Shown here: positions 38,214-56,036 of the stretch, piece by piece | How the letters are laid out: each line of letters begins with the position of its first letter | Numbering within the stretch: the stretch's first letter is position 1 | Virus record (IMG/VR): IMGVR_UViG_3300043446_004613 | Span: 147,114-211,113 of that record | Direction: 5' to 3' (one strand) | DNA length: 64,000 nucleotides | Position numbers and translations under genes: made by a program | Notes under the pieces: generated by a model | What the model was told of the DNA's origin: nothing | The model's input: the letters and a program-made list of their open reading frames with translations, nothing else | Databases searched by the model: none

Positions 38214-39350
38214 ATGAATCTGATCACATTCAATGACCCGATCACAATCGCCTTCAAGAAAAGCGCCGGTGGCGTCACTCAAACCTTTGAAGCCAACCGT
38301 CCATACCTGATCGCCAATGCGCAGATTGAGCGCATCATGCGCGATCAACAAGTCAGCGGACGCGCTTACAAAATCAGCCGCGCCGACACACGTATTCCGA
38401 ACGCGCATAAAGCCGCTTTCAACCGTAATGACAGCGTTCTGATCTACAACGGCAGCGGCGGCTACGGCGACCAGATTTTGACTTGGCCGGTGGCGCGTTA
38501 TCTTGCCAATCAGGGTTTGAAAGTCCACGTCTTAACTGACCCCGGCAACAACGTATGCTGGTGGGGATTTGACTTCGTCAAGACGGTGAACACGATTCCG
38601 TTGCTTTGGGAGACTGTTCAGCTATATGACCACTTCATCCACTGGGAGGCGGTGGTTAACATGGACGAGCATCAGGATCAGGAGCATCCGATTGACATGA
38701 TGTTCCGCAAGATAGGCTACGATCCGGCGGATATTTCGGCTGAGGACAAGTGCGTGCGCCCTGTGTTTACGCCAAGTGAACTAGGCACCTTGAACAAATA
38801 CGTGACTTCCGGCAAGCGCGTCGGTCTTTACCAGCTATCCAGTGCCAATCCAGTGCGCTGCCTGCCTGCGGCGGACAGCGTGTTCTTGATCATGAAGATT
38901 GCTGAAGCCTATCCTGACATTCACTGGCTCTGCCTGCATGACGAGTTTGTGCCCAAGGAGTACAAAGAGACACTGGCTGTTGAAATTACCAAGCGCGGTT
39001 TTACGAATGTGGAAGGTTTTACGGCTCCTAATCTGCGCGAACTGTGGGCGCTGACAGAGCACGTGAATGTGGTTATCAGCCCTGACAGCATGATGGCCCA
39101 CATCGCCGGAGCTTTCGGTACTCCCTGCGTAGGTCTTTGGGGGCCGATGTCACCGGAAAGTCGGATGAAATACTACAAGAACCACCACCCGATCTACCAT
39201 CGCGAGTTCTGCCCGCACAGCCCCTGCTTTGTATACAGTAACACATTCCCGAAATATTGTCCGCCTCGCGCAAATCGCAATGTCTGCGACGTTATGGCCG
39301 GTATTTCGCCTTCGGAAGTGATTAGCGCTATCGGTCACATCTGTAGATAG
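38214..39350 (+). CDS. GT9-like (heptosyltransferase-like) glycosyltransferase
   Basis: GGYGDQI, LRELWALTEHVNVVISPDS..AHIAGAFGTPCVGLWGP; C-terminal C..SPC...C...C cluster. Confidence 0.88.
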   Translation: MNLITFNDPITIAFKKSAGGVTQTFEANRPYLIANAQIERIMRDQQVSGRAYKISRADTRIPNAHKAAFNRNDSVLIYNGSGGYGDQILTWPVARYLANQGLKVHVLTDPGNNVCWWGFDFVKTVNTIPLLWETVQLYDHFIHWEAVVNMDEHQDQEHPIDMMFRKIGYDPADISAEDKCVRPVFTPSELGTLNKYVTSGKRVGLYQLSSANPVRCLPAADSVFLIMKIAEAYPDIHWLCLHDEFVPKEYKETLAVEITKRGFTNVEGFTAPNLRELWALTEHVNVVISPDSMMAHIAGAFGTPCVGLWGPMSPESRMKYYKNHHPIYHREFCPHSPCFVYSNTFPKYCPPRANRNVCDVMAGISPSEVISAIGHICR

Positions 39351-39484
39351 TTCATGAACGATGAACCGATAAATACTGAGTATATTGATCCCGAGGCTGA
39401 ACGCTATCGGTCACATCTGTAGATAGTTCATGAACGATGAACCGTTAAATCCTGAGCATCTTGATCCCGAAGCTGAACGCTATC
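39326..39484 (+). repeat. 76-bp tandem duplication of a gene junction
   Basis: CGCTATC at 39326, 39402 and 39478; first 43 nt identical, then 5 substitutions; first copy encodes MNDEPINTEYIDPEAERYRSHL*. Confidence 0.9.
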
Positions 39485-40158
39485 TCAGCCAGCTTCCGCC
39501 CGCGCCGCCAGACGATACGCTTCAAGGTGTCGTTTCCGCGCTGCAACCGTTGGGCATTACAGAGCTTAAGGTGCAATATTCCGGCTATGGTGACAGTGGA
39601 GACATCGACTACATCAGCATAGAGCCGTCTGACATCGTTTTGCCGGATAAGTTCGATGAAGTGGTTAAAGACGTTGCGTGGAAAACAGCCTACAATCTAC
39701 ACTCCGGATTTGAGAATAACGAAGGTGGTCAAGGTCATGTAACTTTTGATTTTAACGATAGAACGGTCACGGTATATCACACAGACAATGTTGAGTTCGA
39801 CGAGGAACTGAACATGCCGAATTTACCTTTGCCGGAAGAATTTCGGGAATACACTGGGGATGACGGATCGTGCTACATTAGCTTCTACATGGGCAGCGAT
39901 GGTGATGTCTACTTCAATGATAAAACTGAAGGCATCGATGAAGATGCAAACAATGTTGGGGCTATTTCAACGCTTGTTTTTGATAACGCAGACTTAGGGG
40001 AAAATGATTCCTACTCTGGAGCAGTGCGCTGGCAAAATGGCTCAGACACCTGCTCTATCAGAGGCACGAAATCATGGACAGCGACTGACGAGGATAATGC
40101 CTCTGTAAACACGTATACGTTCGATGAAATTTTAGCGAATGAGCAGCTAGGTACCTAA
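39430..40158 (+). CDS. DUF6878-like protein (possibly two domains)
   Basis: VQYSGYGDSGDI...GFENNEGGQGHVTFD; adjacent to a DUF6915-like gene. Confidence 0.6.
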   Translation: MNDEPLNPEHLDPEAERYLSQLPPAPPDDTLQGVVSALQPLGITELKVQYSGYGDSGDIDYISIEPSDIVLPDKFDEVVKDVAWKTAYNLHSGFENNEGGQGHVTFDFNDRTVTVYHTDNVEFDEELNMPNLPLPEEFREYTGDDGSCYISFYMGSDGDVYFNDKTEGIDEDANNVGAISTLVFDNADLGENDSYSGAVRWQNGSDTCSIRGTKSWTATDEDNASVNTYTFDEILANEQLGT

Positions 40159-43709: not shown

Positions 43710-44090
43710 GTGAAGTTAACGCCTGAACAACAGCGCGACATTGCCCGTCGTGCTCAGTGGTACTTTGACTGCTACTTCGGCCCACCCGGTGAGAGTGTGG
43801 TGTTTACCGGAGACGGCGTTGAAGACCTTGATCAGTTGATCAGTCGGTTGCAGTTCAACGGCACGACGAATTTCTTTCGTAACCAGAAGTTTTTCTGTGA
43901 CGTGGGTACCCAGTATTCCGACTGGAAACCGTTTGACATCGACGATGTCGTGGCGATCAAAGCGTTTTACGAAGCGTACTACGGTGACGTCAATAAACCG
44001 AACGTATACGCTTCAGGATCAAACGTGGCAATGCCGGTGGCGATAGACACTGAATATGGCGGGAGCAGCCCGCAGATTTCGATTGAATGA
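43710..44090 (+). CDS. Hypothetical protein
   Basis: GTG 3 nt after GTAGTTAA. Confidence 0.6.
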   Translation: MKLTPEQQRDIARRAQWYFDCYFGPPGESVVFTGDGVEDLDQLISRLQFNGTTNFFRNQKFFCDVGTQYSDWKPFDIDDVVAIKAFYEAYYGDVNKPNVYASGSNVAMPVAIDTEYGGSSPQISIE

Positions 44091-47047
44091 ACGAAGCCTA
44101 CCATAGTCGTTATGACAGACCGGAGATGACTCCGCACACAGCCGGTGCGGATGATCCGAACTTGTCTCTGGACGCGGCGGCAGAGATGGTGGACGCGATC
44201 CTCAACATCGGTTACGTGCGCCATAAGCAGTTGGAAGACTATGCGGCGGCTAGTCAGTCGCTTGAAGTCTATCGCGACGGAACATTCCATATCAAGCACG
44301 CACACGTGGGCCAGTATGCAGACTTTGTAGACCGTTCAAACCACAGTTACTTGAAAGAAACGTATCCGTGGCTGACGGATGTCGGTGATGGGCTTGGTTT
44401 TGACGTAGACACGTGGCCCGAAGAATTCGACAGCTTTGAGGCGTACCTTGCGTCGATAACTGAAGATAGCTGGACAGCCTTCTTTGAGGAACTTGAAAAT
44501 TTGGAGAACTACCCTGTGTTGGATGAGCAGGGCATGTCTGACCTTGAGATGAAGGAGACTGATCGGTGGATCACCGAGGACGGTACCCCAGATATGATCA
44601 AGGAGTTGATGTCTTACATCGACGACGCTTACGAGGTATTTCTTGTCTCAAAGATCACGCCGGACTTGATGTACGAATGGTGCCGCGAAACGGGTCATTA
44701 CCCGGAAAGTCAGGGCGAGGGCGCGGTGTGGCTGGACGTCAAAAGCTACGCGCAGCAGGAAGAGACACAGAACTGGTTCGTTGAGCACATCGACGACGAT
44801 CACGCAGGCTGGGAGGCTGTGCGGACGACGTTCTTTGAGTCGCAAGGTAACAAGTTTGACGCGCTGCTTAAAAAGCTCGCCATTGAGGATGAGGTTATCG
44901 CGACTGTCTACAACAAGCTCGATGCCGACTCTTTCCGCCGTCTGTGGGACTTGGCACACCCTGACCACTGGGCTGGCGGCGATGAGCCTTACTGGTATTT
45001 CTGGAAGCCATACAACGCTACAGAGATCGTGTGGGCTTACGGCTGGGAGCCGGAAGGCTGGGGCAACAATGACTGGATTGGGCAGTATCAACTCGCGCTT
45101 GAAGAGATGTACGATTCGGATAAGTTCCGCAAGCTCGTGGCAACTTTCTTTGAACGTCCGCCCAAAGACCACCCGGAACTGAAATTTGAGTCGATCGACC
45201 CGGATGATCCAAGTATCTTCATGGACTACGGTGGTGGCCTGAACCAGACCACGCTCTATGCCGATGATCGTATTGTTCTCATTGAGCCTAAAGATACAGC
45301 GGCGATAAATCATTACCTTGAAACAGGCGGCTATCAGCCAATCAACGGTCAAGACTACGAACGTTATTTCCGTTGGCCGGACAAGATTGTCATCTTGGAT
45401 AAAGTCGGTGAATCCGACGAGCAAGGCAGCCAATCGGTAAAGCCGCTCGGTATCTTGCTGCTGGAAGATGGAAACATGCGCTCATGGCCGCCTCCGACTT
45501 ACGGTGGAAAAGGCATCGACGTGTTGTTGGAAAACGTGGCTGTGCGGAAAGCCCTGCTTCAGTACTTCCGGCGTCTGATTGAAGAGGACAGTGAATCGTA
45601 CGCGCTAGGCAACTACCTGCTCAAGCTTGGAGGCCCCGCAGAGCTTCGGCGACAGGATCGTAAAGGTAACTTGCGGCTTGATGACTACAGCCTGCCGCTC
45701 GCGCTATACTACGTTAATCGTAAACAGTACAAGAAGATTCCAGCGCTATACGGCAAGCCGGTAGAGGCAGCGGAGCCTCGCGGAATTTGGTTGAGCTACA
45801 CAGGCTTTGATGATCTCGCGCCGGTTTTTGAGAACGAGAAAGCGGCAGAGGAAGTTTTCAGCCAAGAAAATTACCACTGGTTCGATTACACCGACGAGCC
45901 GGAAGCAAAAGATGTAATCCCTTATCTCACAGGTAAAGCGATGAAAAGTATCCGGGAGGCGCTTTTGAATCGCCGCGTCTGGATGCCCGATGCCGGTGAA
46001 AATCAGCGTGGAGACTACGTCGTGCTGACCAAGGCTGTCCTTGATCAGTATGATGATCAGACACTAAAAGACTGGCTGAGTGATCCGAGCGACGAAGATA
46101 CCGAAGATGGTGTGTTCGACGATATAATCGACGCGATTAAATCCGATGGCCGTCGCGCTATCGAGTCGTTAAGTCAGGACAATGTTTACACTGCGTATAC
46201 AGATAAAGCCATCGAACAGATCGGCGGCATTGAGTACAAGTGGGGCACGTCCGGCGTAGACAAGTCTGGTAGACCGAAAGAAGCGCTGCTTGTGTTGGTT
46301 CGCTGGAATGACATCGCTGAAGCAGCTACTACGTATTACAGCAACGAAAACGAAAATTTTAGCGGCGCTTTGGAAGACCTGATGGTGCAAGCCAACAAAA
46401 AGTCAGCCTCAGTGGACGATTCGCAGTATCACGCCAGCACCTACGATTTTGCCAAGTGCCAGCATCTCGATGGCCTCTTTTACGAGATATACGAGCTTGA
46501 AGCGCCTAAGCCTTATGTAGACCCAAACCAAACACAGTTGGCGCTTGAATCGCAGGTTGACTTAGACAGTCCTGACGAAATGCCTGCCATGTGGAGCGGC
46601 ATACCAGTGACACTTGAGAAGCGGGTCAACGCCGCTATCAAAGACGCAGCCAATGCGGAAGGTGCAGTGCTGTCACCTGCACATTTTAAGCTTATACCGA
46701 TCGAGCAGTACTCCGAAGAAGAGCTTGATTCATCGGACGGTCGTTTGACGCAACCAGACGCTGGACGGAAATTGGCGCTTTGGTTTGAATATGACGAGAA
46801 CTTTAAGTGGCGATCGATGCAGAGGCTGTTTGACGCTGTCACGGACATCGTTGTAAACGAGTTCCCGGAATATACGTCCGTGCGCTATTCGGCGAGTATG
46901 CTGGATGCTGACGTGTTAGGCTTGGAAGACATCGAACATCCAGAAAGTACACTCGTGTTTCTGTATGCTCTCCACGACGCTGCTCGAAAGCAGTCGGATC
47001 AAGAAGTGCTTGATCAGCTGGGCGCTGGAGAGGAAATTCCATTTTGA
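44087..47047 (+). CDS. Large acidic multi-module protein (probable head-internal protein)
   Basis: 986 aa, very Asp/Glu-rich; modules separated by LKFESIDPDDP and LALESQVDLD linkers. Confidence 0.6.
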   Translation: MNEAYHSRYDRPEMTPHTAGADDPNLSLDAAAEMVDAILNIGYVRHKQLEDYAAASQSLEVYRDGTFHIKHAHVGQYADFVDRSNHSYLKETYPWLTDVGDGLGFDVDTWPEEFDSFEAYLASITEDSWTAFFEELENLENYPVLDEQGMSDLEMKETDRWITEDGTPDMIKELMSYIDDAYEVFLVSKITPDLMYEWCRETGHYPESQGEGAVWLDVKSYAQQEETQNWFVEHIDDDHAGWEAVRTTFFESQGNKFDALLKKLAIEDEVIATVYNKLDADSFRRLWDLAHPDHWAGGDEPYWYFWKPYNATEIVWAYGWEPEGWGNNDWIGQYQLALEEMYDSDKFRKLVATFFERPPKDHPELKFESIDPDDPSIFMDYGGGLNQTTLYADDRIVLIEPKDTAAINHYLETGGYQPINGQDYERYFRWPDKIVILDKVGESDEQGSQSVKPLGILLLEDGNMRSWPPPTYGGKGIDVLLENVAVRKALLQYFRRLIEEDSESYALGNYLLKLGGPAELRRQDRKGNLRLDDYSLPLALYYVNRKQYKKIPALYGKPVEAAEPRGIWLSYTGFDDLAPVFENEKAAEEVFSQENYHWFDYTDEPEAKDVIPYLTGKAMKSIREALLNRRVWMPDAGENQRGDYVVLTKAVLDQYDDQTLKDWLSDPSDEDTEDGVFDDIIDAIKSDGRRAIESLSQDNVYTAYTDKAIEQIGGIEYKWGTSGVDKSGRPKEALLVLVRWNDIAEAATTYYSNENENFSGALEDLMVQANKKSASVDDSQYHASTYDFAKCQHLDGLFYEIYELEAPKPYVDPNQTQLALESQVDLDSPDEMPAMWSGIPVTLEKRVNAAIKDAANAEGAVLSPAHFKLIPIEQYSEEELDSSDGRLTQPDAGRKLALWFEYDENFKWRSMQRLFDAVTDIVVNEFPEYTSVRYSASMLDADVLGLEDIEHPESTLVFLYALHDAARKQSDQEVLDQLGAGEEIPF

Positions 47048-47049
47048 TT

Positions 47050-48360
47050 ATGACACCGTTTGGATTAGCCAGAAGCCTGCTTGAAGCCGAATACTCGTAT
47101 TCGTCGACGGACATCGCGCCGCCGCCGGAGATGATCGACTTCATCCTTGAATGGAACCGGTTACAGGTTCCTGAAGATGCTCTGGTCATCGATCCAGATG
47201 GCGGCAAAGGTCGTGAACGCGATCCGCATATCACCGTCAAGTACGGGCTGCTTGCAAGCGAAGTACCGGGTGAACTGAGGCAGATCGCCAAGGACACCAG
47301 ACCGTTCCCAATCTTCTTGGGTACTGTATCGTTGTTCACAACGAACCCGCAATTCGATGTGGTGAAAATCGATGTGGAGTCGCCCGAACTTCGCTTGCTC
47401 AACAAGCGCGTCAGCGATGCAATCCCACACGAAGACTCGTATCCGACCTACAATCCACATCTGACGCTCGCCTACGTTAAGAAAGGTTCCTGTACACATC
47501 TTGTCGGGGAAGACCCGTTTGAATCACCAGAGTCGACACGCGAATTCATTGCTGCCGGTATGCGCTTCAGCGGTGCCGGTGACGACAGTGACCCTGACCG
47601 TTTACGTGAGCATTTGCTGTTTAGCCGTGCGCCAAAAGCCAAAGAGGTAACCGAGGCGGTCATAGACGTTGAACGCACCGAAATCGACAGCATTGTAGAC
47701 ATCATTACACAGTGTGCGGAAGAATCCAACAGCGACCCGCGCATTTTTGTGGCCTTGGCTAATGATGCGTTGCAAGACAAAGGCGTCCTGTTCGGCGAAA
47801 CCCAGTTCAACGTGCCAGAAGCGGATGAGACAGGTGTTACCATACCGATCCCTTATCCCCAGCAGCTGCGCAGCCCATACTGGCCGAAGAGCTTGGCTTC
47901 CATTTTATACCATGAAGGCGTTCATCTTGGGCAGATGGATCGCATGCAAGACCCGAAGGCCGTAGCCGATAAGGCTACCGAGTACGTCGCTCCCGGCGGT
48001 AAGATGGATACTGATCGCTATCTGAACCAAAAGCAGGAAGTCATGGCGTGGGCGGCTAGCATGGTTGACTCTTGGCGTCGGCAAGGGCTTTCCAAGGAAC
48101 AGATGGTGCAGCGCCTTCGCTCGGGTAACTGGGGCTACGGAATGAAGTACTGGCATAATCGTCAGCGCTACCCGCAGACGTTCAACCGTTTCGTCAAGCA
48201 GGCGACTGAATACATCAACCTAAGTGAAAGCGAAGAAGCCCGCATTGAATCCGTTAATACTGATCCATTTGCCAACCTGAAGTTCCCGGTTGACCCGGCG
48301 CGGGTTGCTCAGTTCTTAAACAGTAACTGGAGGAAGCGCGTTGGGCGCATGATCCTGTAG
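47050..48360 (+). CDS. 2H phosphoesterase (Acb1/gp57B-like) fused to a HExxH domain
   Basis: DPHITVKYGL and YNPHLTLAYV (two HxT motifs); C-terminal LYHEGVH...QEVMAW. Confidence 0.8.
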   Translation: MTPFGLARSLLEAEYSYSSTDIAPPPEMIDFILEWNRLQVPEDALVIDPDGGKGRERDPHITVKYGLLASEVPGELRQIAKDTRPFPIFLGTVSLFTTNPQFDVVKIDVESPELRLLNKRVSDAIPHEDSYPTYNPHLTLAYVKKGSCTHLVGEDPFESPESTREFIAAGMRFSGAGDDSDPDRLREHLLFSRAPKAKEVTEAVIDVERTEIDSIVDIITQCAEESNSDPRIFVALANDALQDKGVLFGETQFNVPEADETGVTIPIPYPQQLRSPYWPKSLASILYHEGVHLGQMDRMQDPKAVADKATEYVAPGGKMDTDRYLNQKQEVMAWAASMVDSWRRQGLSKEQMVQRLRSGNWGYGMKYWHNRQRYPQTFNRFVKQATEYINLSESEEARIESVNTDPFANLKFPVDPARVAQFLNSNWRKRVGRMIL

Positions 48361-48372
48361 TTATTGCGTTAA

Positions 48373-51300
48373 ATGAGCATCGGCAATCTCAAAGAGCAGT
48401 TTCTGTACGATCTCCTGCCTGACGCTGTCGTCAGTCAGGATGATCGCGGGTACATCGAAGCAGTCGTTTCCGGCGTGCAAGACCGCTTGGAAGACGTGCG
48501 CTCTTATGCCAAGAAGCTGGACTTGTTCTGGCAGCCCGGTGCGCTTCCAACCGGGAGTTACAATGTCATTCTGGTCGATCTCGTCAGCGAACAGGGTAAA
48601 GCGTATACGCGCAGTCTGGACATCCAGACGGATACACCTGCTCCGGGCAGCAGCCAGCTTCCACTGTGGGCAGCTTTTCAACTGAACATCCCGGTCGAAG
48701 CATTAGGCGCGGTGCGTTACGGATACGATGCGTTGCGTGCTGTAGACGTTAACACTTTGGCGTGGCTGGCCCAGACACTGGGAGCGATCCTGTATGATAC
48801 CGACATGCTTGAGGGCAATGCGGTAAACGCCGCTCAAGTCCAACTGGTGTCTACGTGGTTCCCGCGCCTCAAGATCAAAGGCACCAATCAAAGCTTTGAA
48901 GTGCTCGGTAAGATTCTCGGCTTTGACGACATCCGCATGACCCCGCTGTGGTCACGCCTTAATCCGCACGTCCCGGACGATGTCGGCAACAGCGCCAATG
49001 CAACCGATTACGCCGCCGAGCCGGAATACGCGCCGCAGCAAGTTATCGGCCCTTACTACGATCCGTTCGTTTATCGTGACGGCCCTTTTTACAGCTGGAG
49101 CACTACGGTTAACAACGGCACGAACAGCACCGAATTTTACACGGAAAGCGTCAACGGTAAGAATCCTTGGATTCGCGTTGCACTGCTCGGTTCACTGGCA
49201 GGCACGAACGTACCATCGATTCAGAACGGGACAGTTACTCATCCAGCGACTGGCTCATACGCACTGGCCAACGGTAATTCACTGGCCCGCGCATACGTTG
49301 ATCCGCTCGGCAGCAGCGTTCGTTTTCAGGCGGTCGCCGACGGTGCTTCCTTCAACGGCATCTATGTCCACGTTACTACCGTGGGTACGCTGGCGACGAT
49401 TGCCATCGAAGACCGACTGTCGGCAATCAAGTACCGCAGCAGTTACTTCGATCTCGGCCTCACCGCTGACATGGACAAGGTGGAGGAAATCTTTGGAAGC
49501 CGGGCGGCGACGACCAATAAAGACCTCAAAGCCAATCCGAACCTGACCCCGGATGGAACGGCGGAGAGTCCATACCGGCCTTGGGTATCCGGCAGCATCG
49601 CTGTTGCCGAGACGACGACAGACTGGGTGACTTCAAACGGCGACATCACCTACACGGTTGTTGCTCGTCAGCAAGCTGATCCAGCGGTCGGTGACCGCCA
49701 GCTGAACACGGATTCACTGGTCGTTGCCGGTGTGCAGGTCACGCAAGCCTTGGAAGAGGTACGTGCAGCTACCCGCCTACCCCGGCGTAGCCAGACCGGT
49801 TTCTTGGTGAATGACAGCGCTTGCTATGCGCCGTACGCTGTAAACGGCACGTTGTTTACAGAACCGACAGCAGTCGCCGCCTCAAGCGGAACCTGCGCTG
49901 ATGCGCCGTTGGGTTCGTATGTGGCTGCTCTGACGGCAGTCATTCCCAATGTAACGGAGATCAAGTGGGTCGCTGAAGCAAACGTTCAGTACGTCCTGAC
50001 CGCTTATTTCATATCGCCGCCCGCACCAAACGTCGTGCTTGGAACAGTCACAGCGCAGAACGCAGGAACGTACGCTTTTTACACCGATACCAGCCCATCC
50101 GCCGCTTTCTCCATCGAACCGTCTCCGGTCTATGCGTTCCCGGTGCAATCGAACACGGCAACGCTGCCTTTGACCGCTGAGGTTAATCCGGCAAACTACG
50201 ACGAATACATCTACGCGATAAAGTCGGATACGAACATAACCTGCACCGGTTCGTTTAATTTCGCGACTGGGCAGTACGGCTTCAGCCACAGCAACATTGC
50301 AGATTTTACGGTGTTGACGGCATGGACGCTGGTGAGCACAGGTACGATTCGGCCTGAGCCTTATGAAAGTGTTCTGGTTTGTGAAACAGGCACGTTTTAC
50401 ACCGATAGCACGTTAGGCCCGACGAACACAAATCCGACTGCGCCGTGGCCGGATACAGGCATATTTTTTCAACAAGGCGAACTGATCTCGATAACGACGG
50501 TCGGTTCTGTTTCACCAACGCCCGGTTATTGGATCGGGCCGGAAGGCTACAACTGGGCACCTGACCGGCTGGACAATCGGTTCAAGCACGAAGCTTTGCT
50601 TGGTCGCGTCGGGCTATCGGGCAGCATCTTTTTGGTCGGCTCGCTCTATTCCGGCGCGGCGACAGACACCGGAAGCCTTTACCTAGTCACGAATGACGTA
50701 TCACGCGCCAACAACGAAGGCTCGTTTACATCGTACATTACCGTCTGTTCCGAAGAAGAACAACGGGCGGCGGAAGCGTGCTTGTGTCGTCCCGAAGACG
50801 AAGATGACGGGCTGATTTACGAGGTTGCTGATGATTTTCCGTGGAACCGTGAAGTCACGGTCGGCGGTGAACTGGTTGAGTTGGACATCTACCGCACAGG
50901 CACGGACATCGCTGTTCAAGAGCTAGAGGAGGCAACAGCTTTCAACGACCAGACCGGTGTCGACATAAATGTCTACGCGCTGACCAGTCCCAACACATCG
51001 GTACCTCGTCTGACCTACGAACCGCGTTCAATCGCTAAAGGCGTATACAGTCCGGCCTACACCGCCATCGGCTATCAAGGCACACTCAAGGACTTGTCTA
51101 CGCTAACATCAGCGGAAACAGACTTCATACGTCCTCCGATCGGTTCCAGCTTTGGCGATACAGAGACGGACTATGACGTGCTCTTTCAGCCCGGATACAG
51201 TCTGTACCACGTTGGCCTCGCTCAAGGCGTTTTGGTTGCGGACTTGGTTAAATTTTTCGGCCCTCAGCACAGCGTGGGCTTGGTCGGTTGGTTCGCATTT

Positions 51301-54300
51301 AATGAGCACGTAGACGCAGCGCTTTCTGTAGTCGACCACAGCTTCCGGGCTACGCCGACAGACTTGATCGGTGTTAATAGCGCAGACCGCCATTTTGACT
51401 CTGTTCGTGGATGGTGCCTGACGTTGAATGACAGTCAGGTGATTGCCGATGAATACCGTGATTTGGTAGACGAAGTGACGGCGGCGTTCTGGATCAAGCG
51501 CACGGCGACTGCACTCTACCCGTCAACGGAAACTACGATTGTCGACTGTTCACTGGTCTATTTCACGCTAAGCCCCGGCGGTGCCGTGACTGGCTACGCC
51601 AAAAAGGACAACGGTGTAGGCACTGCCCTTGGCAGCGTAGTGATTGCAGACGGCGAATGGCACTTCATTTACATCCGGCGCAGCGAACACAATGCAGTGT
51701 TCGGTGATGCAACGTTGTCTACCAGTGCTGTGGAAATCAACGTAGCTGGTTCATACCTTGCCGGTGATCCCGATATTGATACGCTGGTAAATGTGCAAGC
51801 TGCCAATGGCGCTGCATTTACGATCCACGATCTGCGCATCTGGAACGTGACCAAGACAGCAGCGGAAATGGACTTGATCCGTTACCATAATCCGACACCG
51901 ACGCTCTGCACTTACCGCCTTGGGTTCATCTATACGCTGGATCGAAAGGACAAATACGGTATCAAGATTCTACCGTCCGGTTGGGCTTACCCGAATGTAT
52001 TGCCTGCGTGGTATCGTCGCACGCGCCAAGGTCTGGTGTTGCGCTACGATAGCATGGGTTCCTACCACGGCGACAGCCGTTTCAAGGAAGTCGGTATCGG
52101 CGACTGTCGTCCGTTGCCGGACACTTATACGCTGGGTGCTCAGTTCACGTGTATGACTGGTGAAGGCACGACGCCGTACAGCACTGACAGCGGACAGTTG
52201 CCCGGTTGGTCTGCTAAGTGGCAGTCCCAGAACAATTCAGGCAACTACCTGAAATTAAACTTCAGCGGCAGCACGGCTAACGGTATTCCAGCGGTCACTG
52301 TTTCAAGCGGTACCGCAACGCCGTGGCCGAACACGATGACGCAGACTAATCCGTTCCGTGAGTACGTGTACGTGCTTACCACGAACGGGCAGCATGTATA
52401 CCAGATGGCTTTGAATGGTGATGCCGCATCAACATGGTTGGAGGCGGTTTTCGTGGGTACAGTAGGAAATGAAGAAGCCACCGGGGCTTATACACGGCTC
52501 AGCAAGAACGGCGTAGGCATGCTTTTCGCCGACCCGACCACAATGCGCGGCGTTATCTCAGCCGCGAATCCGTGGCCGACGCTTGGTATGTTCACAACGC
52601 CGCCGCTGTACATGTATCTGACCAGCCGCAGCAAGCAGACAGTGGGAGATGCTCACGACACATGGGTCGACAAGACACCTACAGGCAGTCCGCCCGTAGT
52701 GACGCCCGAGGATAATGCCGTCGATTGGCAGCCCATGCCAAGCATCGTGCGTATCGACTCGTACGGAACATCTTTGTATACGCCTGCACTCGGCAAAGCG
52801 GGCGTGCTTGAGTTTACAGGTAGCAACTACCTCGCTACAGGCAACTACGAGCTAACGATTGTTAGTGCGCAAGTAGGTCAAGCGGATGAAGACTTTGACG
52901 GATTCGCTGTCGGCATCAATGTGAACGACACGGTTATCCAGCGCCGCCTGCTGCGCGGTAAGAGCGGCTACAATTTTAGCGGCACGGATACGTTTCAGTT
53001 TTATCTGGACGACGAAGTGAGCGGGAATTATCTGATCAGTTTCGATTGGACGAACCCATTGACAGATACGGCAAAAGGAACCAAGCGCCAGCTGGCGATC
53101 CTTGGTTACACACTCCGCCACATCAATACTGAGATTTTTAAGGTTGAGGCGCTGAGCGTTGGGTCACCCACATTTACGCAGCTTTCTACCGACATCAGTT
53201 CTATTGGTACGACACCCGGCGGCTGGTTTGCAGCAATCAATAGCTATGGTACTGCGGTAGGCTACCAGCACGAATCGACAATCTATACGTCGAACGAAAA
53301 TACAGCGGCAATATATCCCGTTGGAGATACGCTCTCTCCGCTGACAAACGAACGTCGCGACGACATCATTTATACCGGAACGAATGTCGTCGTTGCCGAT
53401 ACCGGTACAATCACGATGCCGAACTTTACGGCGGCAGGCACGGCTCCGCAGGACGCTCCGGCTTGGGTTTGGGCAGGTGCCTTGACCAGTAATCCATCGT
53501 TCACAGTGACAGTCAAAACGACCGGTCAAACGACACTTCGCTTAGCGGTAAGCGAGTCGAGCACTTTTAGCGATAGTTCGATGACCGACATGGTGGCCTC
53601 GGGTGCCGACAATTACACCAAGATCAAAGTTGATGGGTTGAAGCCGTGGACAACCTACTATTACGCTGTCGAGACAGGCGGAAGCATCCATTATGAGATG
53701 GCAGGTACCGTTGCAACATCCGGTACAGGTGCCCAGAGCTTTAAGTTTGCGGTGGTCGCTTGCGAGAACAATACCAGTTTAAGCACGGTATCCAACGCGG
53801 CTTGGGGATTTATTCACACGCAGAATCCGATGTTTGTAATGCACGTTGGGGATTTCCATTACTACAACATCAACGTAAACGATCCATCTTTTTACCGGAC
53901 AGCGTTCAACAACGTGCTATCGGAAAGCAAACACAAAGCGTTCTACCGGCAACATGGCGTCATGTACATGTGGGATGATCACGATTACGGCCCGAATGAC
54001 GGCAGTAGCGCAAACGTATCACGCCCGGCAGCCCGTTCGGCCTACCGGCAAGTGGTACCGCATCTGCCTTTGGCAGCGGGCGATGGTAACCAGCCGATTT
54101 ATTACGCGTTTACTGTAGGGCGCTGTCGCTTCATCGTCACTGATTGCCGATCGGAACGTACGCCAGTAACGGTGGCTGATAACAACAACAAGACCGTACT
54201 AGGCGCGGCGCAAAAAGCTTGGTTCAAGCAGGAACTGCTGGCGGCTAGTTCAAGTGGAGACATTGCAGCGATCTTCTGGGTCAATTCCTTCCCGTGGACA

Positions 54301-54756
54301 GGCGTTGCCCATCCCGAAGCGAATCCGAGCGTGGAGAACTGGGCAGCCTATCCGACTGAACGTAAAGAGATCGCAGATTACATTTACAGCAAGGCCATCC
54401 GCAAAGTGTTCATTCTCTCGGGCGACATGCACGCCACGGCTTTTGACGATGGTCGAACCTACGATTTTCACGCAAACGGTACGAATTCCGTAGCCCCTAA
54501 TGGACACGGACTACCGGTATTTCAGTGCGGTCAGCTATACAACTCGAATAGCCAAAAGGGAACGCCATACCAAATCGGCCCGTTCTATACAGGCTCAGGC
54601 ACGCGTTCTATCTTTGGCATGGTTCAGGTGGACGACTACGGAAGTTACATGCTCATCACTTTCACCGCCCGCAGCGGAGCCAGCGGAGCAATCGTGAACG
54701 TGGGCGGTATCTACGTTACGGCAACACTTAACTCAGCAGAATCACCCAGACCATGA
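48373..54756 (+). CDS. phoD: Baseplate wedge-type protein with LamG domain and C-terminal PhoD phosphatase
   Basis: N-terminal gpI/gp7-like LAWLAQTLG...KIKGT; LamG (AFWIK, EWHFI, IHDLRIWN); PhoD from about 53461 (VACE, GDFHY, WDDHD..PND, DCRS, GDMH). Confidence 0.88.
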   Translation: MSIGNLKEQFLYDLLPDAVVSQDDRGYIEAVVSGVQDRLEDVRSYAKKLDLFWQPGALPTGSYNVILVDLVSEQGKAYTRSLDIQTDTPAPGSSQLPLWAAFQLNIPVEALGAVRYGYDALRAVDVNTLAWLAQTLGAILYDTDMLEGNAVNAAQVQLVSTWFPRLKIKGTNQSFEVLGKILGFDDIRMTPLWSRLNPHVPDDVGNSANATDYAAEPEYAPQQVIGPYYDPFVYRDGPFYSWSTTVNNGTNSTEFYTESVNGKNPWIRVALLGSLAGTNVPSIQNGTVTHPATGSYALANGNSLARAYVDPLGSSVRFQAVADGASFNGIYVHVTTVGTLATIAIEDRLSAIKYRSSYFDLGLTADMDKVEEIFGSRAATTNKDLKANPNLTPDGTAESPYRPWVSGSIAVAETTTDWVTSNGDITYTVVARQQADPAVGDRQLNTDSLVVAGVQVTQALEEVRAATRLPRRSQTGFLVNDSACYAPYAVNGTLFTEPTAVAASSGTCADAPLGSYVAALTAVIPNVTEIKWVAEANVQYVLTAYFISPPAPNVVLGTVTAQNAGTYAFYTDTSPSAAFSIEPSPVYAFPVQSNTATLPLTAEVNPANYDEYIYAIKSDTNITCTGSFNFATGQYGFSHSNIADFTVLTAWTLVSTGTIRPEPYESVLVCETGTFYTDSTLGPTNTNPTAPWPDTGIFFQQGELISITTVGSVSPTPGYWIGPEGYNWAPDRLDNRFKHEALLGRVGLSGSIFLVGSLYSGAATDTGSLYLVTNDVSRANNEGSFTSYITVCSEEEQRAAEACLCRPEDEDDGLIYEVADDFPWNREVTVGGELVELDIYRTGTDIAVQELEEATAFNDQTGVDINVYALTSPNTSVPRLTYEPRSIAKGVYSPAYTAIGYQGTLKDLSTLTSAETDFIRPPIGSSFGDTETDYDVLFQPGYSLYHVGLAQGVLVADLVKFFGPQHSVGLVGWFAFNEHVDAALSVVDHSFRATPTDLIGVNSADRHFDSVRGWCLTLNDSQVIADEYRDLVDEVTAAFWIKRTATALYPSTETTIVDCSLVYFTLSPGGAVTGYAKKDNGVGTALGSVVIADGEWHFIYIRRSEHNAVFGDATLSTSAVEINVAGSYLAGDPDIDTLVNVQAANGAAFTIHDLRIWNVTKTAAEMDLIRYHNPTPTLCTYRLGFIYTLDRKDKYGIKILPSGWAYPNVLPAWYRRTRQGLVLRYDSMGSYHGDSRFKEVGIGDCRPLPDTYTLGAQFTCMTGEGTTPYSTDSGQLPGWSAKWQSQNNSGNYLKLNFSGSTANGIPAVTVSSGTATPWPNTMTQTNPFREYVYVLTTNGQHVYQMALNGDAASTWLEAVFVGTVGNEEATGAYTRLSKNGVGMLFADPTTMRGVISAANPWPTLGMFTTPPLYMYLTSRSKQTVGDAHDTWVDKTPTGSPPVVTPEDNAVDWQPMPSIVRIDSYGTSLYTPALGKAGVLEFTGSNYLATGNYELTIVSAQVGQADEDFDGFAVGINVNDTVIQRRLLRGKSGYNFSGTDTFQFYLDDEVSGNYLISFDWTNPLTDTAKGTKRQLAILGYTLRHINTEIFKVEALSVGSPTFTQLSTDISSIGTTPGGWFAAINSYGTAVGYQHESTIYTSNENTAAIYPVGDTLSPLTNERRDDIIYTGTNVVVADTGTITMPNFTAAGTAPQDAPAWVWAGALTSNPSFTVTVKTTGQTTLRLAVSESSTFSDSSMTDMVASGADNYTKIKVDGLKPWTTYYYAVETGGSIHYEMAGTVATSGTGAQSFKFAVVACENNTSLSTVSNAAWGFIHTQNPMFVMHVGDFHYYNINVNDPSFYRTAFNNVLSESKHKAFYRQHGVMYMWDDHDYGPNDGSSANVSRPAARSAYRQVVPHLPLAAGDGNQPIYYAFTVGRCRFIVTDCRSERTPVTVADNNNKTVLGAAQKAWFKQELLAASSSGDIAAIFWVNSFPWTGVAHPEANPSVENWAAYPTERKEIADYIYSKAIRKVFILSGDMHATAFDDGRTYDFHANGTNSVAPNGHGLPVFQCGQLYNSNSQKGTPYQIGPFYTGSGTRSIFGMVQVDDYGSYMLITFTARSGASGAIVNVGGIYVTATLNSAESPRP

Positions 54757-56036
54757 ATCAAGTAGGCGATCAAGTTATCTTGCTGGCGACACCGATACCT
54801 ACCGGTAGCGATGTTTACAGCTATGTCTGGGACTTTTGGGATAATTCTTCGGCAGCGACCAGCCAACCGTTTATCACTAAAGTTGTAAACATGGGCGGCA
54901 ATCCGTTCAACGATGTGCTGTCTTACCGTTGCCGCCCGGTAGCTGTCGACGGTCAAAGTGATACGGTGCTTGGTTACATCACGGCAAATCAGCCGCCGAC
55001 CATATTGCCGGGGGTCAGCATCAGCCGAAATGACGAATACTTTACGTATCCGACACGGCTATCGTTGACGGCTATCGACATTGATGGCGACGCCATTGGA
55101 TTCAGCTGGTATCAGGGAACAAATTACATCGGTTCCGGTACCACGGCATCTGCCGGTAGCGCGAATGGAACATGGCACGGCCCGGAGTGGTACAACGGGA
55201 CGACGATTGTCGTATCGCGCCCGGCTACCGAGTGTTACTACGATCTGCTCGTAACTAGCCCGCGCACCGTCACATGTAAGGTTTATGATGTGCGCGGTGG
55301 TACGAGTTCCGTCGACTTTTTGCTGCGCGGTGACGCGAATAGACCACCGGATGCAAGTCTTACCGCAGGTGTAAACGGCGTCGCCTTTGACGCAAGTACG
55401 CCAGTCCAAGCTAGGATCGGTGAAAGCCAGCAGCTGACTTTCAGCGTGTTTGTCGGCCCGATGCCGACACACGTTGTTTATTTTGATTGGAGTTTTTCGG
55501 GAAGTAACCACTGGACGATGGCTCCGCACAGCGTAAACGGCACCACGACTTATCTGGCCAACGGTGCGATCCAGAACACCGTGGAACGCGACATCAGTGC
55601 GGAAGTAGTCACCAGTGGCACAGCCAAGCTGGCCCGTGTGGATGTACGTGTATACGCCGAAAATATCTACGACAGTCGCGTCAGTTATACCGACATAAGC
55701 TATTCGGTATTGCTCATCGAGAATAGTGCTCCTAGCGCAGTCACGGTGGGGCGCTACGATGAAAACAACCTGCCGATTGATACATCGACCGGAACCGGCA
55801 CGAAGATTTTGTTCACCGCGACCGGCACAGACTACAATAACGACTGGATGACCTACGAATGGGCGTTCTCGCATACCGTGCCGCATCTGCCCAGCCCGTT
55901 TTACTGCTGGGGGCCGAAAGTCGTATTCGATACGACCGGCGCGGTGGTCGATACGACGCTTGAAGGTCTGCTTACGGTTACGGATGTGTTGGGCGGCAAA
56001 CTTATCGTAGCGCTGCCTTCTACCACGCTGGAATAA
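54753..56036 (+). CDS. PKD/Ig-domain virion protein
   Basis: YSYVWDFWD, FSWYQG, YEWAFS repeated PKD-like motifs. Confidence 0.7.
   Translation: MNQVGDQVILLATPIPTGSDVYSYVWDFWDNSSAATSQPFITKVVNMGGNPFNDVLSYRCRPVAVDGQSDTVLGYITANQPPTILPGVSISRNDEYFTYPTRLSLTAIDIDGDAIGFSWYQGTNYIGSGTTASAGSANGTWHGPEWYNGTTIVVSRPATECYYDLLVTSPRTVTCKVYDVRGGTSSVDFLLRGDANRPPDASLTAGVNGVAFDASTPVQARIGESQQLTFSVFVGPMPTHVVYFDWSFSGSNHWTMAPHSVNGTTTYLANGAIQNTVERDISAEVVTSGTAKLARVDVRVYAENIYDSRVSYTDISYSVLLIENSAPSAVTVGRYDENNLPIDTSTGTGTKILFTATGTDYNNDWMTYEWAFSHTVPHLPSPFYCWGPKVVFDTTGAVVDTTLEGLLTVTDVLGGKLIVALPSTTLE

What the first reader, a model, noticed from the sequence alone, without database searches (positions are those of the whole stretch)
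48373..54756. PhoD phosphatase fused to the C-terminus of a 2127-aa baseplate protein
Seen in sequence: one uninterrupted ORF with a gpI/gp7-like baseplate N-terminus, a LamG domain, and from about 53461 an FN3-like PhoD N-domain plus a catalytic domain. It retains all canonical PhoD ligand motifs (VAC, GD.HY, WDDHD, PND, GDMH) and has no Tat signal. Established: PhoD is a secreted Fe/Ca phosphatase/phosphodiesterase that can act on teichoic acids. Inference: the virion displays several copies of an active phosphatase at the adsorption device. It could cleave phosphodiester-linked surface polymers or phosphorylated receptors, or release phosphate at the cell surface. I am not aware of PhoD described as a structural baseplate fusion.
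Basis: partly seen in the sequence, partly recalled or inferred. Interest (0 to 1): 0.82.

Follow-up and report, generated by a model that had tools for sequence, protein, structure and literature searches.

The report
Phage baseplate protein carrying PhoD phosphatase
An uncultured freshwater giant phage encodes a 2127-residue tail-baseplate protein that ends in an apparently active PhoD-type phosphatase, which suggests that some phage "phosphate-scavenging" genes are really enzymes carried on the virus particle to work on the host cell surface.

Summary
The ORF at 48373-54756 is one intact 2127-aa gene, and it is not an assembly chimera. The same 21.6 kb occurs in two IMG/VR contigs, re-assembled contigs from two runs span the junction, and 31 relatives share the architecture.

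The layout is:
- a conserved N-terminal core (aa 1-520), whose first ~230 aa are a divergent P2 gpI (Tail_P2_I) domain, shown through an intermediate profile;
- a variable insert (aa 521-800) with a PA-IL/LecA-type lectin;
- a conserved core (aa 801-1690) with a ConA-like/LamG jelly roll;
- a disordered linker;
- a PhoD module (aa 1697-2127) with every Fe3+/Ca2+ ligand of B. subtilis PhoD in place.

The phage is a contractile-tailed jumbo phage with no cultured relative. The PhoD module is an optional add-on, present in 32 of 120 homologues, and was gained or lost at least 9 times. Eleven other members carry a purple-acid-phosphatase-like module at another site.

I conclude that it is a virion-displayed phosphoesterase on the baseplate periphery. 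The teichoic-acid idea is unlikely, because the host looks Gram-negative. Phage PhoD genes are already known as presumed metabolic genes, and tail-borne phosphodiesterases of another fold (GDPD) are known. This is therefore a new variant of a known kind. Activity, virion location and substrate are untested.

The parts
48373..54756 (+). Whole ORF, 2127 aa: modular baseplate (gpI-class) protein with a C-terminal PhoD module
   Evidence: about 150 homologues among 1.84 billion representative proteins
48373..49062 (+). aa 1-230: divergent Tail_P2_I (P2 gpI)-type baseplate-anchoring domain
   Evidence: Its profile retrieves a distant group. hhalign to that group gives 99.7%, E 2e-26. Of that group, 14 of 29 hit Pfam Tail_P2_I, best 8e-8; the one member whose score is shown has 32.3 bits, above the 20.6 cut-off. 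6 of 57 close relatives give sub-threshold Tail_P2_I hits. The top BFVD hit is 'Tail protein I'.
48373..49932 (+). aa 1-520: conserved core 1, present in all homologues
   Evidence: BLAST coverage profile; AF2 model with mean pLDDT 81
49933..50772 (+). aa 521-800: hypervariable insertion site, shared by few homologues
   Evidence: Coverage falls to 2-50 of 119 homologues. In P0080 and P0091 a Metallophos module sits here.
50455..50739 (+). aa 695-789: PA-IL/LecA-type Ca-dependent lectin domain
   Evidence: Pfam PA-IL scores 23.7 bits against a cut-off of 22.5 when the part is scanned alone. PDB LecA matches at E 4e-3, with the Ca ligands D100, N107 and N108 aligned and conserved, while the galactose contacts H50 and Q53 are not.
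50773..53442 (+). aa 801-1690: conserved core 2, beta-rich, present in all homologues
51463..51867 (+). aa 1031-1165: ConA-like / LamG jelly-roll domain
   Evidence: Pfam Laminin_G_3 is weak. PF13385 is on record in P0020, P0021, P0026 and P0078. Foldseek gives E 1e-9 to ConA-like jelly-roll receptor-binding subdomains.
53317..53457 (+). aa 1649-1695: predicted disordered linker; relatives without PhoD end here
   Evidence: pLDDT is below 50 for model residues 850-896. HSP ends of the short homologues fall here.
53461..53697 (+). aa 1697-1775: FN3-like N-domain of PhoD/purple acid phosphatases
   Evidence: Sub-threshold PhoD_N and Pur_ac_phosph_N hits. The region is covered by the PHROG profiles and by the 2yeq alignment.
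53746..54693 (+). aa 1792-2107: PhoD catalytic domain with a full metal-ligand set
   Evidence: ligand list from PMC4223295
47044..48360 (+). Conserved upstream neighbour, 438 aa: 2H phosphoesterase (two HxTx motifs) plus an HExxH motif. The link to the finding is not established.
   Evidence: same gene order in L003
54753..56036 (+). Conserved downstream neighbour, 427 aa, PKD/Ig-like repeats. Its start overlaps the stop of the large ORF (ATGA).
   Evidence: present after the large gene in L003, L009, L012, L013, L015, L017, L018 and L030

Best explanation
The ORF encodes the gpI-class baseplate wedge protein of an uncultured freshwater jumbo myovirus, enlarged into a long peripheral arm.

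The N-terminal ~230 aa (Tail_P2_I type) anchor it in the baseplate. By analogy with P2 gpI and T4 gp7 there would be one copy per wedge, so about six per virion. This copy number is inferred from established baseplate structures, not shown here.

The rest carries carbohydrate-binding modules: a PA-IL-type Ca lectin and a ConA-like jelly roll. At its end, on a ~45-residue flexible linker, sits a PhoD-type Fe3+/Ca2+ phosphomono/diesterase with a complete active site.

During adsorption the lectin modules would hold the baseplate on host surface glycans. The tethered PhoD would hydrolyse phosphoester groups in the surface layer. Candidate substrates are phosphodiester-bridged or phosphate-decorated capsule, EPS or LPS, or possibly matrix DNA. 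Hydrolysis would expose or clear the way to the receptor. This is the role glycan depolymerases and GDPD phosphodiesterases play on other phage tails.

Shown: gene integrity, domain identities, ligand conservation, modular swapping, and contractile-tail genes in the genome.

Inferred: virion location and copy number, catalytic activity, and substrate.
For: - Reality and integrity of the gene.
- gpI homology through an intermediate group. Weaker leads.
- The phage has a sheath, a baseplate hub, a gp25-like wedge protein and a portal, so it needs a gpI/gp7-class protein.
- A gp25 gene lies next to the orthologue in L029.
- Extracellular-type binding modules: PA-IL and ConA-like. Relatives carry PKD, CHB_HEX_C and Fn3_assoc modules at the same C-terminal position.
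- PhoD identity and ligands. The ligands are conserved in 31 of 32 fusions despite 36-57% identity.
- PhoD is a clean add-on after the linker and needs 14 changes on the tree, at least 9 of them forced by well-supported branches. This is the pattern expected of distal host-interaction modules.
- Eleven relatives carry a different, purple-acid-phosphatase-like module at the internal insertion site, and one has both. The same chemistry has been recruited repeatedly onto this scaffold.
- Precedents: a PhoD-domain protein sits in the gene slot after the tape measure and tail protein in Thermobifida phage P1312. One sits inside the structural block in Microbacterium phage Alleb. The 38%-identical YongM protein ranked 7th of 32 proteins in particle LC-MS/MS (PMC8875764). 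GDPD phosphodiesterases occur in tail modules (PMC10194240).
Against: - The query gives no direct hit to Tail_P2_I, and no solved baseplate structure matches the N-terminal model.
- The local gene neighbourhood is replication-type and unknown genes, not a baseplate cluster. No gpJ/gp6-like partner was found in the window.
- There are no virion proteomics, no activity data and no known host for this lineage.
- The YongM preparation also contained DNA polymerase and thymidylate kinase, so it was not a clean virion proteome.
- Streptomyces phages carry their PhoD homologue among tRNA genes, and cyanophage Elbi carries its homologue among nucleotide-metabolism and hypothetical genes. Phage PhoD is therefore not always structural.
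- One family member (P0007) has a PhoD module with all ligands replaced, so catalysis is dispensable at least there.
- Loading of Fe3+/Ca2+ into a protein made without export has not been tested.
Confidence: 0.5

Rival explanations
1. Auxiliary metabolic gene reading. The PhoD module mineralises organic phosphorus, in the lysate or around the infected population, to relieve phosphate limitation. Its attachment to a structural protein would be incidental, or a way to release it at lysis.
For: Phage phoD genes are widespread and are interpreted this way. One was expressed and found active (PMC10987575). The closest cellular relatives are secreted 'alkaline phosphatase D family' enzymes of environmental bacteria. 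The source is a freshwater metagenome.
Against: An AMG gains nothing from being tethered to a 1690-aa baseplate scaffold that also carries lectins. About six copies per particle is negligible for bulk phosphate supply. The same scaffold swaps PhoD for PKD and other binding modules, which is how host-recognition parts behave, not metabolic genes. There is no export signal, so the enzyme cannot serve the living infected cell from outside.
Confidence: 0.15
2. Binding-module reading. The PhoD fold is used mainly as a receptor-binding domain for a phosphorylated surface ligand, with little or no turnover.
For: P0007 keeps the module although every metal ligand is replaced. The module sits at the distal tip, where receptor-binding domains usually sit, and it alternates with PKD-type binding modules in relatives.
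Against: The full ligand set is conserved in 31 of 32 modules at only 36-57% overall identity. This points to selection on catalysis or at least on metal binding. A purple-acid-phosphatase-like module has been recruited in parallel.
Confidence: 0.15
3. Not a baseplate protein. On this reading the protein is a head or tail fibre, a decoration protein or a non-virion protein, and the gpI similarity is a shared small domain without a shared location.
For: The gene neighbourhood is not a baseplate cluster. Foldseek found no solved baseplate match. In Microbacterium phage Alleb the PhoD-like protein lies between the capsid and head-tail connector genes. In YongM it lies next to a 'capsid fiber protein'.
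Against: The homology chain to Tail_P2_I is strong: 99.7% by hhalign, with 14 of 29 intermediates hitting the Pfam model. The match is at the N-terminus, as in gpI-class proteins. The family is single-copy and conserved in phages that have sheath, hub and gp25 genes.
Confidence: 0.15
4. Counter-defence reading. Together with the adjacent 2H phosphoesterase, the PhoD module degrades nucleotide second messengers or nucleic acids inside the cell.
For: A 2H phosphoesterase with intact HxTx motifs always precedes the gene. Jumbo phages encode many phosphodiesterases with proposed counter-nucleotide roles (PMC7824862).
Against: The 2H neighbour is equally present in relatives that lack PhoD, so the pairing is with the scaffold and not with PhoD. 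PhoD enzymes are extracytoplasmic Ca2+-dependent enzymes (PMC4223295). The lectin, ConA-like and PKD context is extracellular.
Confidence: 0.04
5. Assembly chimera that joins a structural gene to a bacterial phoD.
For: None was found. There is only a slight GC dip (0.51 against 0.54-0.56) around 53000-54000.
Against: The sequence is identical in two IMG/VR contigs. Independent re-assembly from two runs spans the junction at about 20x depth without differences. The same fusion occurs in 31 diverged homologues.
Confidence: 0.01

Closest known systems
P2 gpI / Pfam Tail_P2_I (PF09684) baseplate proteins. By published structural work, recalled and not tested here, these are the counterparts of Mu gp48 and the N-terminal part of T4 gp7.
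   Same: The N-terminal domain is homologous through an intermediate profile, including the conserved ...KGT...LG(F/Y)...(E/L)W motif. The genome is that of a contractile-tailed phage.
   Different: P2 gpI has 176 aa; this protein has 2127. The query gives no direct HMM hit. The gene is not in a W-J-I-H type gene cluster. It carries lectin and enzyme modules.
B. subtilis PhoD (PDB 2yeq) and the PhoD family PF09423
   Same: It has the same fold family and the same Fe3+/Ca2+ ligand set: Cys, Asp, Tyr, Asp-Asp, Asn-Asn/Asp, Asp and His. It belongs to the Cys subfamily.
   Different: It is not an orthologue: 52 bits against a cut-off of 1000 on the NCBIfam equivalog model. It has no Tat signal. 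The B. subtilis C-terminal cap helix falls outside the aligned region (chain residues 65-386), and the paper says most PhoD proteins lack it. It is an internal module of a phage structural protein.
Phage-encoded PhoD proteins: PHROGs 13624, 24476 and 25497; Anabaena phage Elbi gp95; Nostoc phage YongM; Thermobifida phage P1312 gp22; Streptomyces and Microbacterium phage 'hydrolase/phosphoesterase' proteins; and soil-virome phoD 'AMGs' (PMC10987575)
   Same: The PhoD module is the same, at 26-40% identity. P1312, Alleb and YongM hint at virion association.
   Different: Those proteins have 650-1100 aa and unrelated partner regions. None has the gpI-type N-terminus: tblastn matched only aa 1698-2125. 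The published interpretation is metabolic, not structural.
Tail-associated glycerophosphodiester phosphodiesterase (GDPD) domains of phages of Gram-positive bacteria (PMC10194240)
   Same: It works like them in concept: a phosphodiesterase carried on the tail or baseplate to attack a phosphate-containing surface polymer.
   Different: The fold is unrelated (a TIM-barrel GDPD against a PhoD/PAP metallophosphoesterase). Their substrate is wall teichoic acid of Gram-positive hosts, whereas here the host is probably Gram-negative and the substrate is unknown.
Tailspike and tail-fibre depolymerases in general
   Same: The virion-borne enzyme sits at the distal end of a modular, frequently recombining host-recognition protein.
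   Different: Those are glycosidases, lyases or esterases, usually trimeric beta-helices. This is a metallophosphoesterase on a baseplate wedge-class scaffold.

Membership tests
PhoD family (PF09423) | Match to the family HMM above the curated threshold | tested here: met
   80.1 bits against a cut-off of 27, E 2e-22, aa 1792-2027; 2yeq at E 1.5e-12
PhoD family (PF09423) | Metal ligands C180, D207, Y210, D265, D266, N271, N272 and D436 (B. subtilis numbering, PMC4223295) | tested here: met
   The equivalents are C1797, D1827, Y1830, D1868, D1869, N1875, D1876 and D2018, with H2020 in the GDxH motif. N272 replaced by Asp is a substitution the paper itself reports as common.
PhoD family (PF09423) | N-terminal FN3-like domain (PhoD_N) | tested here: inconclusive
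   PhoD_N scores 17.6 bits and Pur_ac_phosph_N 22.8 bits, both below the cut-off of 30. The region is aligned by the PHROG profiles and by 2yeq. No structure model of this part was made.
PhoD family (PF09423) | Tat-dependent export (typical of bacterial members) | tested here: not met
   The module starts at aa ~1697 of a phage protein, and there is no signal peptide at the N-terminus. This is a feature of localisation, not of the fold.
PhoD family (PF09423) | Phosphomono/diesterase activity with Fe3+ and Ca2+ | not testable with these tools
   Needs an enzyme assay.
B. subtilis PhoD orthologues (NCBIfam NF058638 equivalog; teichoic-acid-linked) | Score above the equivalog cut-off | tested here: not met
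   52 bits against a cut-off of 1000
Tail_P2_I / P2 gpI baseplate proteins (PF09684) | Direct match of the protein to the family HMM | tested here: not met
   No hit for aa 1-260 or 1-520 even at E 10. 6 of 57 close relatives give sub-threshold hits, best E 5e-4.
Tail_P2_I / P2 gpI baseplate proteins (PF09684) | Homology shown by profile methods | tested here: met
   The profile of aa 1-230 finds a distant group at E 1e-15 to 2e-4 in 1.84 billion proteins. hhalign to that group gives 99.7%, E 2e-26 over 207 columns. Of that group, 14 of 29 hit PF09684, best 8e-8; the one member whose score is shown is above threshold. The group aligns to a P2 gpI alignment at E 2e-4 over the KGT motif region. 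Direct hhalign of the family to the narrow P2 gpI alignment was negative.
Tail_P2_I / P2 gpI baseplate proteins (PF09684) | Gene lies in a baseplate cluster next to gpW/gp25 and gpJ/gp6 homologues | tested here: not met
   The window neighbours are a helicase, a replication-type protein, an unknown 986-aa protein and a 2H phosphoesterase. The gp25-like gene is 15 kb away. In L029 a gp25 gene is adjacent to the orthologue. No gpJ-like gene was found.
Tail_P2_I / P2 gpI baseplate proteins (PF09684) | Protein present in the baseplate of the virion | not testable with these tools
   This lineage has no cultured member: tblastn finds no N-terminal match among 50,697 phage records.
T4 gp7-like wedge proteins | Fold similarity to solved baseplate structures | tested here: not met
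   Foldseek of the aa 1-530 model (pLDDT 81) against the PDB gave no match at E <= 0.001. The core-2 model matched only ConA-like jelly rolls among the 50 matches listed, of 233 at E <= 0.001.
LamG / ConA-like lectin superfamily | Jelly-roll fold or HMM match | tested here: met
   Foldseek gives E 1e-9, probability 1.0, about 224 columns at 3.8-4.8 A. Pfam Laminin_G_3 is sub-threshold here but is recorded in four homologues.
PA-IL / LecA lectins (PF07828) | HMM match and Ca2+-binding residues | tested here: met
   23.7 bits against a cut-off of 22.5 on the part alone (19.9 on the whole protein). The equivalents of D100, N107 and N108 are conserved and T104 is replaced by Ser. The galactose contacts H50 and Q53 are not conserved, so specificity is unknown.
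GDPD tail phosphodiesterases | GDPD domain | tested here: not met
   No GDPD hit in the Pfam scan. The resemblance is functional only.

The most novel reading that the evidence does not exclude
Metallophosphoesterases of the PhoD and purple-acid-phosphatase type form an unrecognised class of virion-borne host-surface enzymes. They have been recruited repeatedly onto the baseplate arm of a lineage of uncultured jumbo phages. They may also sit on the tails or particles of cyanophages and actinophages. If so, a share of the 'phoD auxiliary metabolic genes' counted in viromes are adsorption enzymes that act on phosphorylated envelope polymers of Gram-negative hosts, not phosphate-scavenging genes.
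Probability: 0.4. Interest if true: 0.7.

Novelty: new variant of a known kind. Interest (0 to 1): 0.55.

Why it matters
First, it would add a new enzyme chemistry, Fe/Ca metallophosphoesterase, to the known set of virion-associated host-surface enzymes. It would also point to phosphorylated surface polymers as phage receptors or barriers in Gram-negative freshwater bacteria.

Second, it questions a current habit in viral ecology. Phage phoD genes are counted as phosphorus-cycling AMGs (PMC10987575), but here the gene is a swappable tip module of a structural protein.

Third, it gives a first functional handle on the largest gene of a jumbo-phage lineage that has no cultured member and almost no annotated genes.

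The cultured cyanophages YongM and Elbi carry a 38-40% identical PhoD protein, so the virion-enzyme idea can be tested now.

Tried and rejected
- Direct identification of the N-terminus failed. Pfam and PHROGs on sub-pieces at E 10, NCBIfam and a PDB profile search all gave nothing. Foldseek gave nothing significant against the PDB and only weak hits against BFVD. hhalign against P2 gpI alone and against a narrow gpI alignment was negative.
- Scanning the 10 most divergent relatives for Tail_P2_I gave nothing. The exhaustive profile search followed by Pfam on its distant hits settled the question.
- A megablast of the gene against phage genomes found no match.
- A scan of GTDB genomes for the N-terminal core found no relatives, so there is no prophage or host clue.
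- The ESM-atlas search of the upstream 986-aa protein was uninformative.
- I considered whether the upstream 438-aa protein is the gpJ/gp6 partner and rejected it. It is a 2H phosphoesterase with an HExxH motif.
- I considered using the GTAGTTA motif as evidence of co-regulation with structural genes and rejected it. The motif also precedes a gene in the replication block and often overlaps the stop codon of the preceding gene.
- P0241, the best 'stand-alone' PhoD relative at 53% identity, turned out to be a family member truncated by a contig end.
- The Foldseek matches of core 2 to clostridial neurotoxin binding domains are a generic ConA-like jelly-roll resemblance, not a toxin relationship.

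Full report
**Observation**

The window holds one uninterrupted ORF at 48373-54756 on the + strand, 2127 aa with an ATG start. Its start lies 12 nt after the stop of the preceding gene. Its stop overlaps the start of the next gene in an ATGA. Base composition is even across it, apart from a small GC dip near 53000-54000.

**The PhoD module**

- Pfam PhoD matches aa 1792-2027 at 80 bits, against a cut-off of 27.
- Three PHROG families of phage proteins match aa 1693-2107 at E 1e-43 to 1e-57.
- B. subtilis PhoD (2yeq) matches at E 1.5e-12.

I used the ligand list of the PhoD structure paper (C180, D207, D265, D266, N271, N272 and D436, plus the Fe-binding tyrosine; PMC4223295) together with the HMMER alignment. 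The equivalents here are C1797, D1827, Y1830, D1868, D1869, N1875, D1876 and D2018, with H2020 in the GDxH motif. The paper itself describes Asn-272 to Asp as a common variant.

The module belongs to the cysteine subfamily. It is a family member but not an orthologue of B. subtilis PhoD, scoring 52 bits against a cut-off of 1000 on the NCBIfam equivalog model. The FN3-like N-domain gives only sub-threshold Pfam hits.

**Not an artefact**

- The 21.6 kb around the gene is identical, with no mismatch, in two IMG/VR contigs from two datasets: 3300043446_004613 (211 kb, the source of the window) and 3300046804_005041 (110 kb).
- Logan contigs of two runs of a freshwater metagenome each cover 51000-56000 in one piece at about 20x depth, with no differences, joints or loose ends. 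These runs may come from the source sample. They are an independent assembly, not an independent sample.
- The strongest evidence is that 31 homologues from other metagenomes carry the same fusion at 36-57% identity in the module.

**The family and the architecture**

A search with aa 1-500 found about 120 proteins of 1200-2400 aa, on contigs of up to 260 kb. An exhaustive profile search of 1.84 billion representatives found only 153 proteins in all. None is in a cultured phage: tblastn of the whole protein against 50,697 phage records matched only the PhoD part. None is in GTDB genomes either.

BLAST coverage along the query defines four parts:

- Core 1, aa 1-520, is present in all members.
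- An insertion site, aa ~521-800, is shared by few members.
- Core 2, aa ~801-1690, is present in all members.
- An optional C-terminal module follows aa ~1690. Members without PhoD simply end at the position equivalent to aa 1685-1690.

The AlphaFold model of aa 800-1695 is confident in the body (407 residues at pLDDT >= 90) but disordered over its last ~47 residues, aa 1649-1695. PhoD therefore hangs on a flexible linker.

**Other modules**

The insertion holds a PA-IL/LecA-type lectin at aa 695-789. It scores 23.7 bits against a cut-off of 22.5 when the part is scanned alone. In the LecA alignment the Ca2+ ligands D100, N107 and N108 are conserved and T104 is replaced by Ser. The galactose contacts H50 and Q53 are not conserved.

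Core 2 holds a ConA-like/LamG jelly roll:
- Laminin_G_3 is weak here.
- It is on record for four homologues.
- Foldseek gives E 1e-9, probability 1.0, to ConA-like jelly-roll subdomains of receptor-binding proteins. This is a fold resemblance only.

**Is the N-terminus gpI-like?**

Direct tests failed. Weak leads agreed with each other:
- Tail_P2_I was the only Pfam family hit by several close relatives (6 of 57, best E 5e-4).
- The top BFVD structural hit is named 'Tail protein I' (E 4e-3).
- ESM-atlas neighbours include baseplate-wedge and Tail_P2_I clusters.

The decisive test was transitive:
1. A profile of aa 1-230 retrieved a distant group of 1000-1350-aa proteins at E 1e-15 to 2e-4, matching the same N-terminal region.
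2. Of 29 of these, 14 hit Pfam Tail_P2_I, best 8e-8. The one member whose score is shown has 32.3 bits, above the 20.6 cut-off, in exactly that region.
3. hhalign between the two groups gives 99.7% probability, E 2e-26, over 207 columns.
4. The distant group aligns to a P2 gpI alignment at E 2e-4 over the conserved KGT...LG...W segment.

The distant group are orthologues in related jumbo phages. They share the upstream helicase and the downstream ~425-aa gene, and in one contig a gp25 gene lies next to the gene.

The window itself encodes a tail sheath, a baseplate hub, a gp25-like wedge protein and a portal. The phage is therefore contractile-tailed and needs a protein of this class.

I accept the gpI-class assignment with the following reservations:
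- The local neighbourhood is not a baseplate cluster. It holds a helicase, a replication-type protein, an unknown 986-aa protein and a 2H phosphoesterase.
- No gpJ/gp6 partner was found in the window.
- No solved baseplate structure matched.
- The equivalence of gpI with the N-terminal part of T4 gp7, and the figure of one copy per wedge, come from published baseplate structures that I recall. They were not tested here.

**Evolution of the PhoD module**

On a tree of core 1, PhoD presence needs 14 changes, at least 9 of them forced by well-supported branches, within one clade of 80 members. The metal ligands are conserved in 31 of the 32 modules. One protein (P0007) has every ligand replaced.

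At the same C-terminal position other members carry PKD, CHB_HEX_C or Fn3_assoc modules, or unknown ones. Eleven members carry a calcineurin-type Metallophos module in the internal insertion site. Its nearest solved relatives are purple acid phosphatases (weak, E 3e-4). One protein has both that module and PhoD.

So phosphoesterases of two sister families have been recruited to two different sites of the same scaffold. I read this as selection for that chemistry at this place on the particle.

**Host and substrate**

- The phage is remote from all cultured phages. Its sheath is 22% identical to that of a Flavobacterium phage, and its portal is barely detectable.
- Only 2 of 32 genes have a Shine-Dalgarno-like motif.
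- There is an LPS-heptosyltransferase-family gene.
- The nearest cellular PhoD relatives (35-43% identity) are 'alkaline phosphatase D family' proteins of Bacteroidota (several with a type IX secretion sorting domain), Chloroflexota, Verrucomicrobiota and Planctomycetota.

This points to a Gram-negative freshwater host, so teichoic acid is an unlikely substrate. The actual substrate is unknown. Candidates are phosphodiester-bridged or phosphate-decorated capsule, EPS or LPS, or matrix DNA. This is inference.

**What is already known**

Phage PhoD genes are not new:
- There are three PHROG families.
- About 50 cultured phages carry annotated homologues.
- A 2024 study counts phoD as the commonest soil-phage phosphorus AMG and showed activity for one enzyme that was longer than usual (PMC10987575). 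That paper never uses the word 'tail' (0 occurrences).

Some contexts hint at structural roles:
- In Thermobifida phage P1312 the 1096-aa PhoD protein follows the tape measure and a tail protein.
- In Microbacterium phage Alleb it lies between the capsid and head-tail connector genes.
- In cyanophage YongM the 38%-identical protein ranked 7th of 32 proteins in LC-MS/MS of concentrated phage, above the baseplate J and tail fibre proteins. That preparation also contained replication enzymes (PMC8875764).

In Streptomyces phages the gene lies among tRNA genes, and in cyanophage Elbi among nucleotide-metabolism and hypothetical genes.

Tail-borne phosphodiesterases of a different fold (GDPD) are documented for phages of Gram-positive hosts (PMC10194240). 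Full-text searches found no paper that describes PhoD as part of a baseplate or tail protein.

**Verdict**

This is a new variant of a known kind. A PhoD-type metallophosphoesterase serves as a swappable distal module of a gpI-class baseplate protein, in a jumbo-phage lineage with no cultured member. Its main value is as a testable challenge to the AMG reading of phage phoD. Virion location, activity and substrate remain untested.

Noticed in passing
window 47044-48360 (+): A 438-aa protein lies directly upstream. It has a 2H phosphoesterase domain with both HxTx motifs (DPHITV, NPHLTL) and a C-terminal HEGVH (HExxH, metalloprotease-like) motif. A 2H-domain gene also precedes the large gene in a distant relative that lacks PhoD (L003).
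   Followed up: partly
P0007 (homologue, 1999 aa), PhoD module aa ~1556-1998: The PhoD module is retained but every metal ligand is replaced (C to N, D to G, DD to AA, H to Q, D to E, H to D). It is either a catalytically dead module kept as a domain or one in decay.
   Followed up: partly
P0078, P0080, P0087, P0091, P0092, P0094-P0096, P0098, P0099, P0109 (insertion site equivalent to window aa 521-800): Eleven family members carry a calcineurin-type Metallophos (PF00149) module at the internal insertion site. Its nearest solved relatives are purple acid phosphatases. P0094 has both this module and a C-terminal PhoD.
   Followed up: partly
window 1890, 2015, 3497, 3536, 14109, 23638, 30484, 33582, 43699, 48357 (all + strand): The motif GTAGTTA(A) occurs 10 times, against 4.3 expected on both strands together, and always on the + strand. 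Eight copies lie just upstream of start codons: the sheath, the portal, the giant ORF, and the genes at 14120, 23649, 33596, 43710 and a small ORF at 2028. The motif often overlaps the preceding stop codon. It may be a promoter or a re-initiation signal.
   Followed up: partly
window, 32 gene starts: Only 2 of 32 genes have a Shine-Dalgarno-like motif in the 25 nt before the start. This would fit a host with weak SD usage, such as Bacteroidota or cyanobacteria.
   Followed up: partly
window 38214-39350 (+): The phage encodes a glycosyltransferase family 9 (LPS heptosyltransferase-like) protein. It is followed by a DUF6878 protein at 39430-40158.
   Followed up: no
window 54753-56036 (+): A 427-aa protein made of PKD/Ig-like repeats has a start that overlaps the stop of the giant ORF (ATGA). 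It is conserved downstream of the giant gene in nearly all relatives examined. It is a likely structural partner.
   Followed up: partly
window 32460-33233 (+) and 30499-32472 (+): The gp25-like baseplate wedge domain (aa 156-247 of a 257-aa protein) is encoded immediately after, and overlapping, the portal gene. This is far from the sheath (3558), the hub (13078-14100, minus strand) and the gpI-class gene. The structural genes of this phage are scattered.
   Followed up: no
window 44087-47047 (+): A 986-aa protein with no detectable family in Pfam, PHROGs or the ESM atlas is conserved upstream of the 2H gene in relatives, where it has 700-1070 aa.
   Followed up: partly
window 50455-50739 (aa 695-789 of the giant ORF): The PA-IL/LecA-type lectin insert is shared by only about 2 of 119 homologues. 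It is a very recent or rare acquisition within the hypervariable site.
   Followed up: partly
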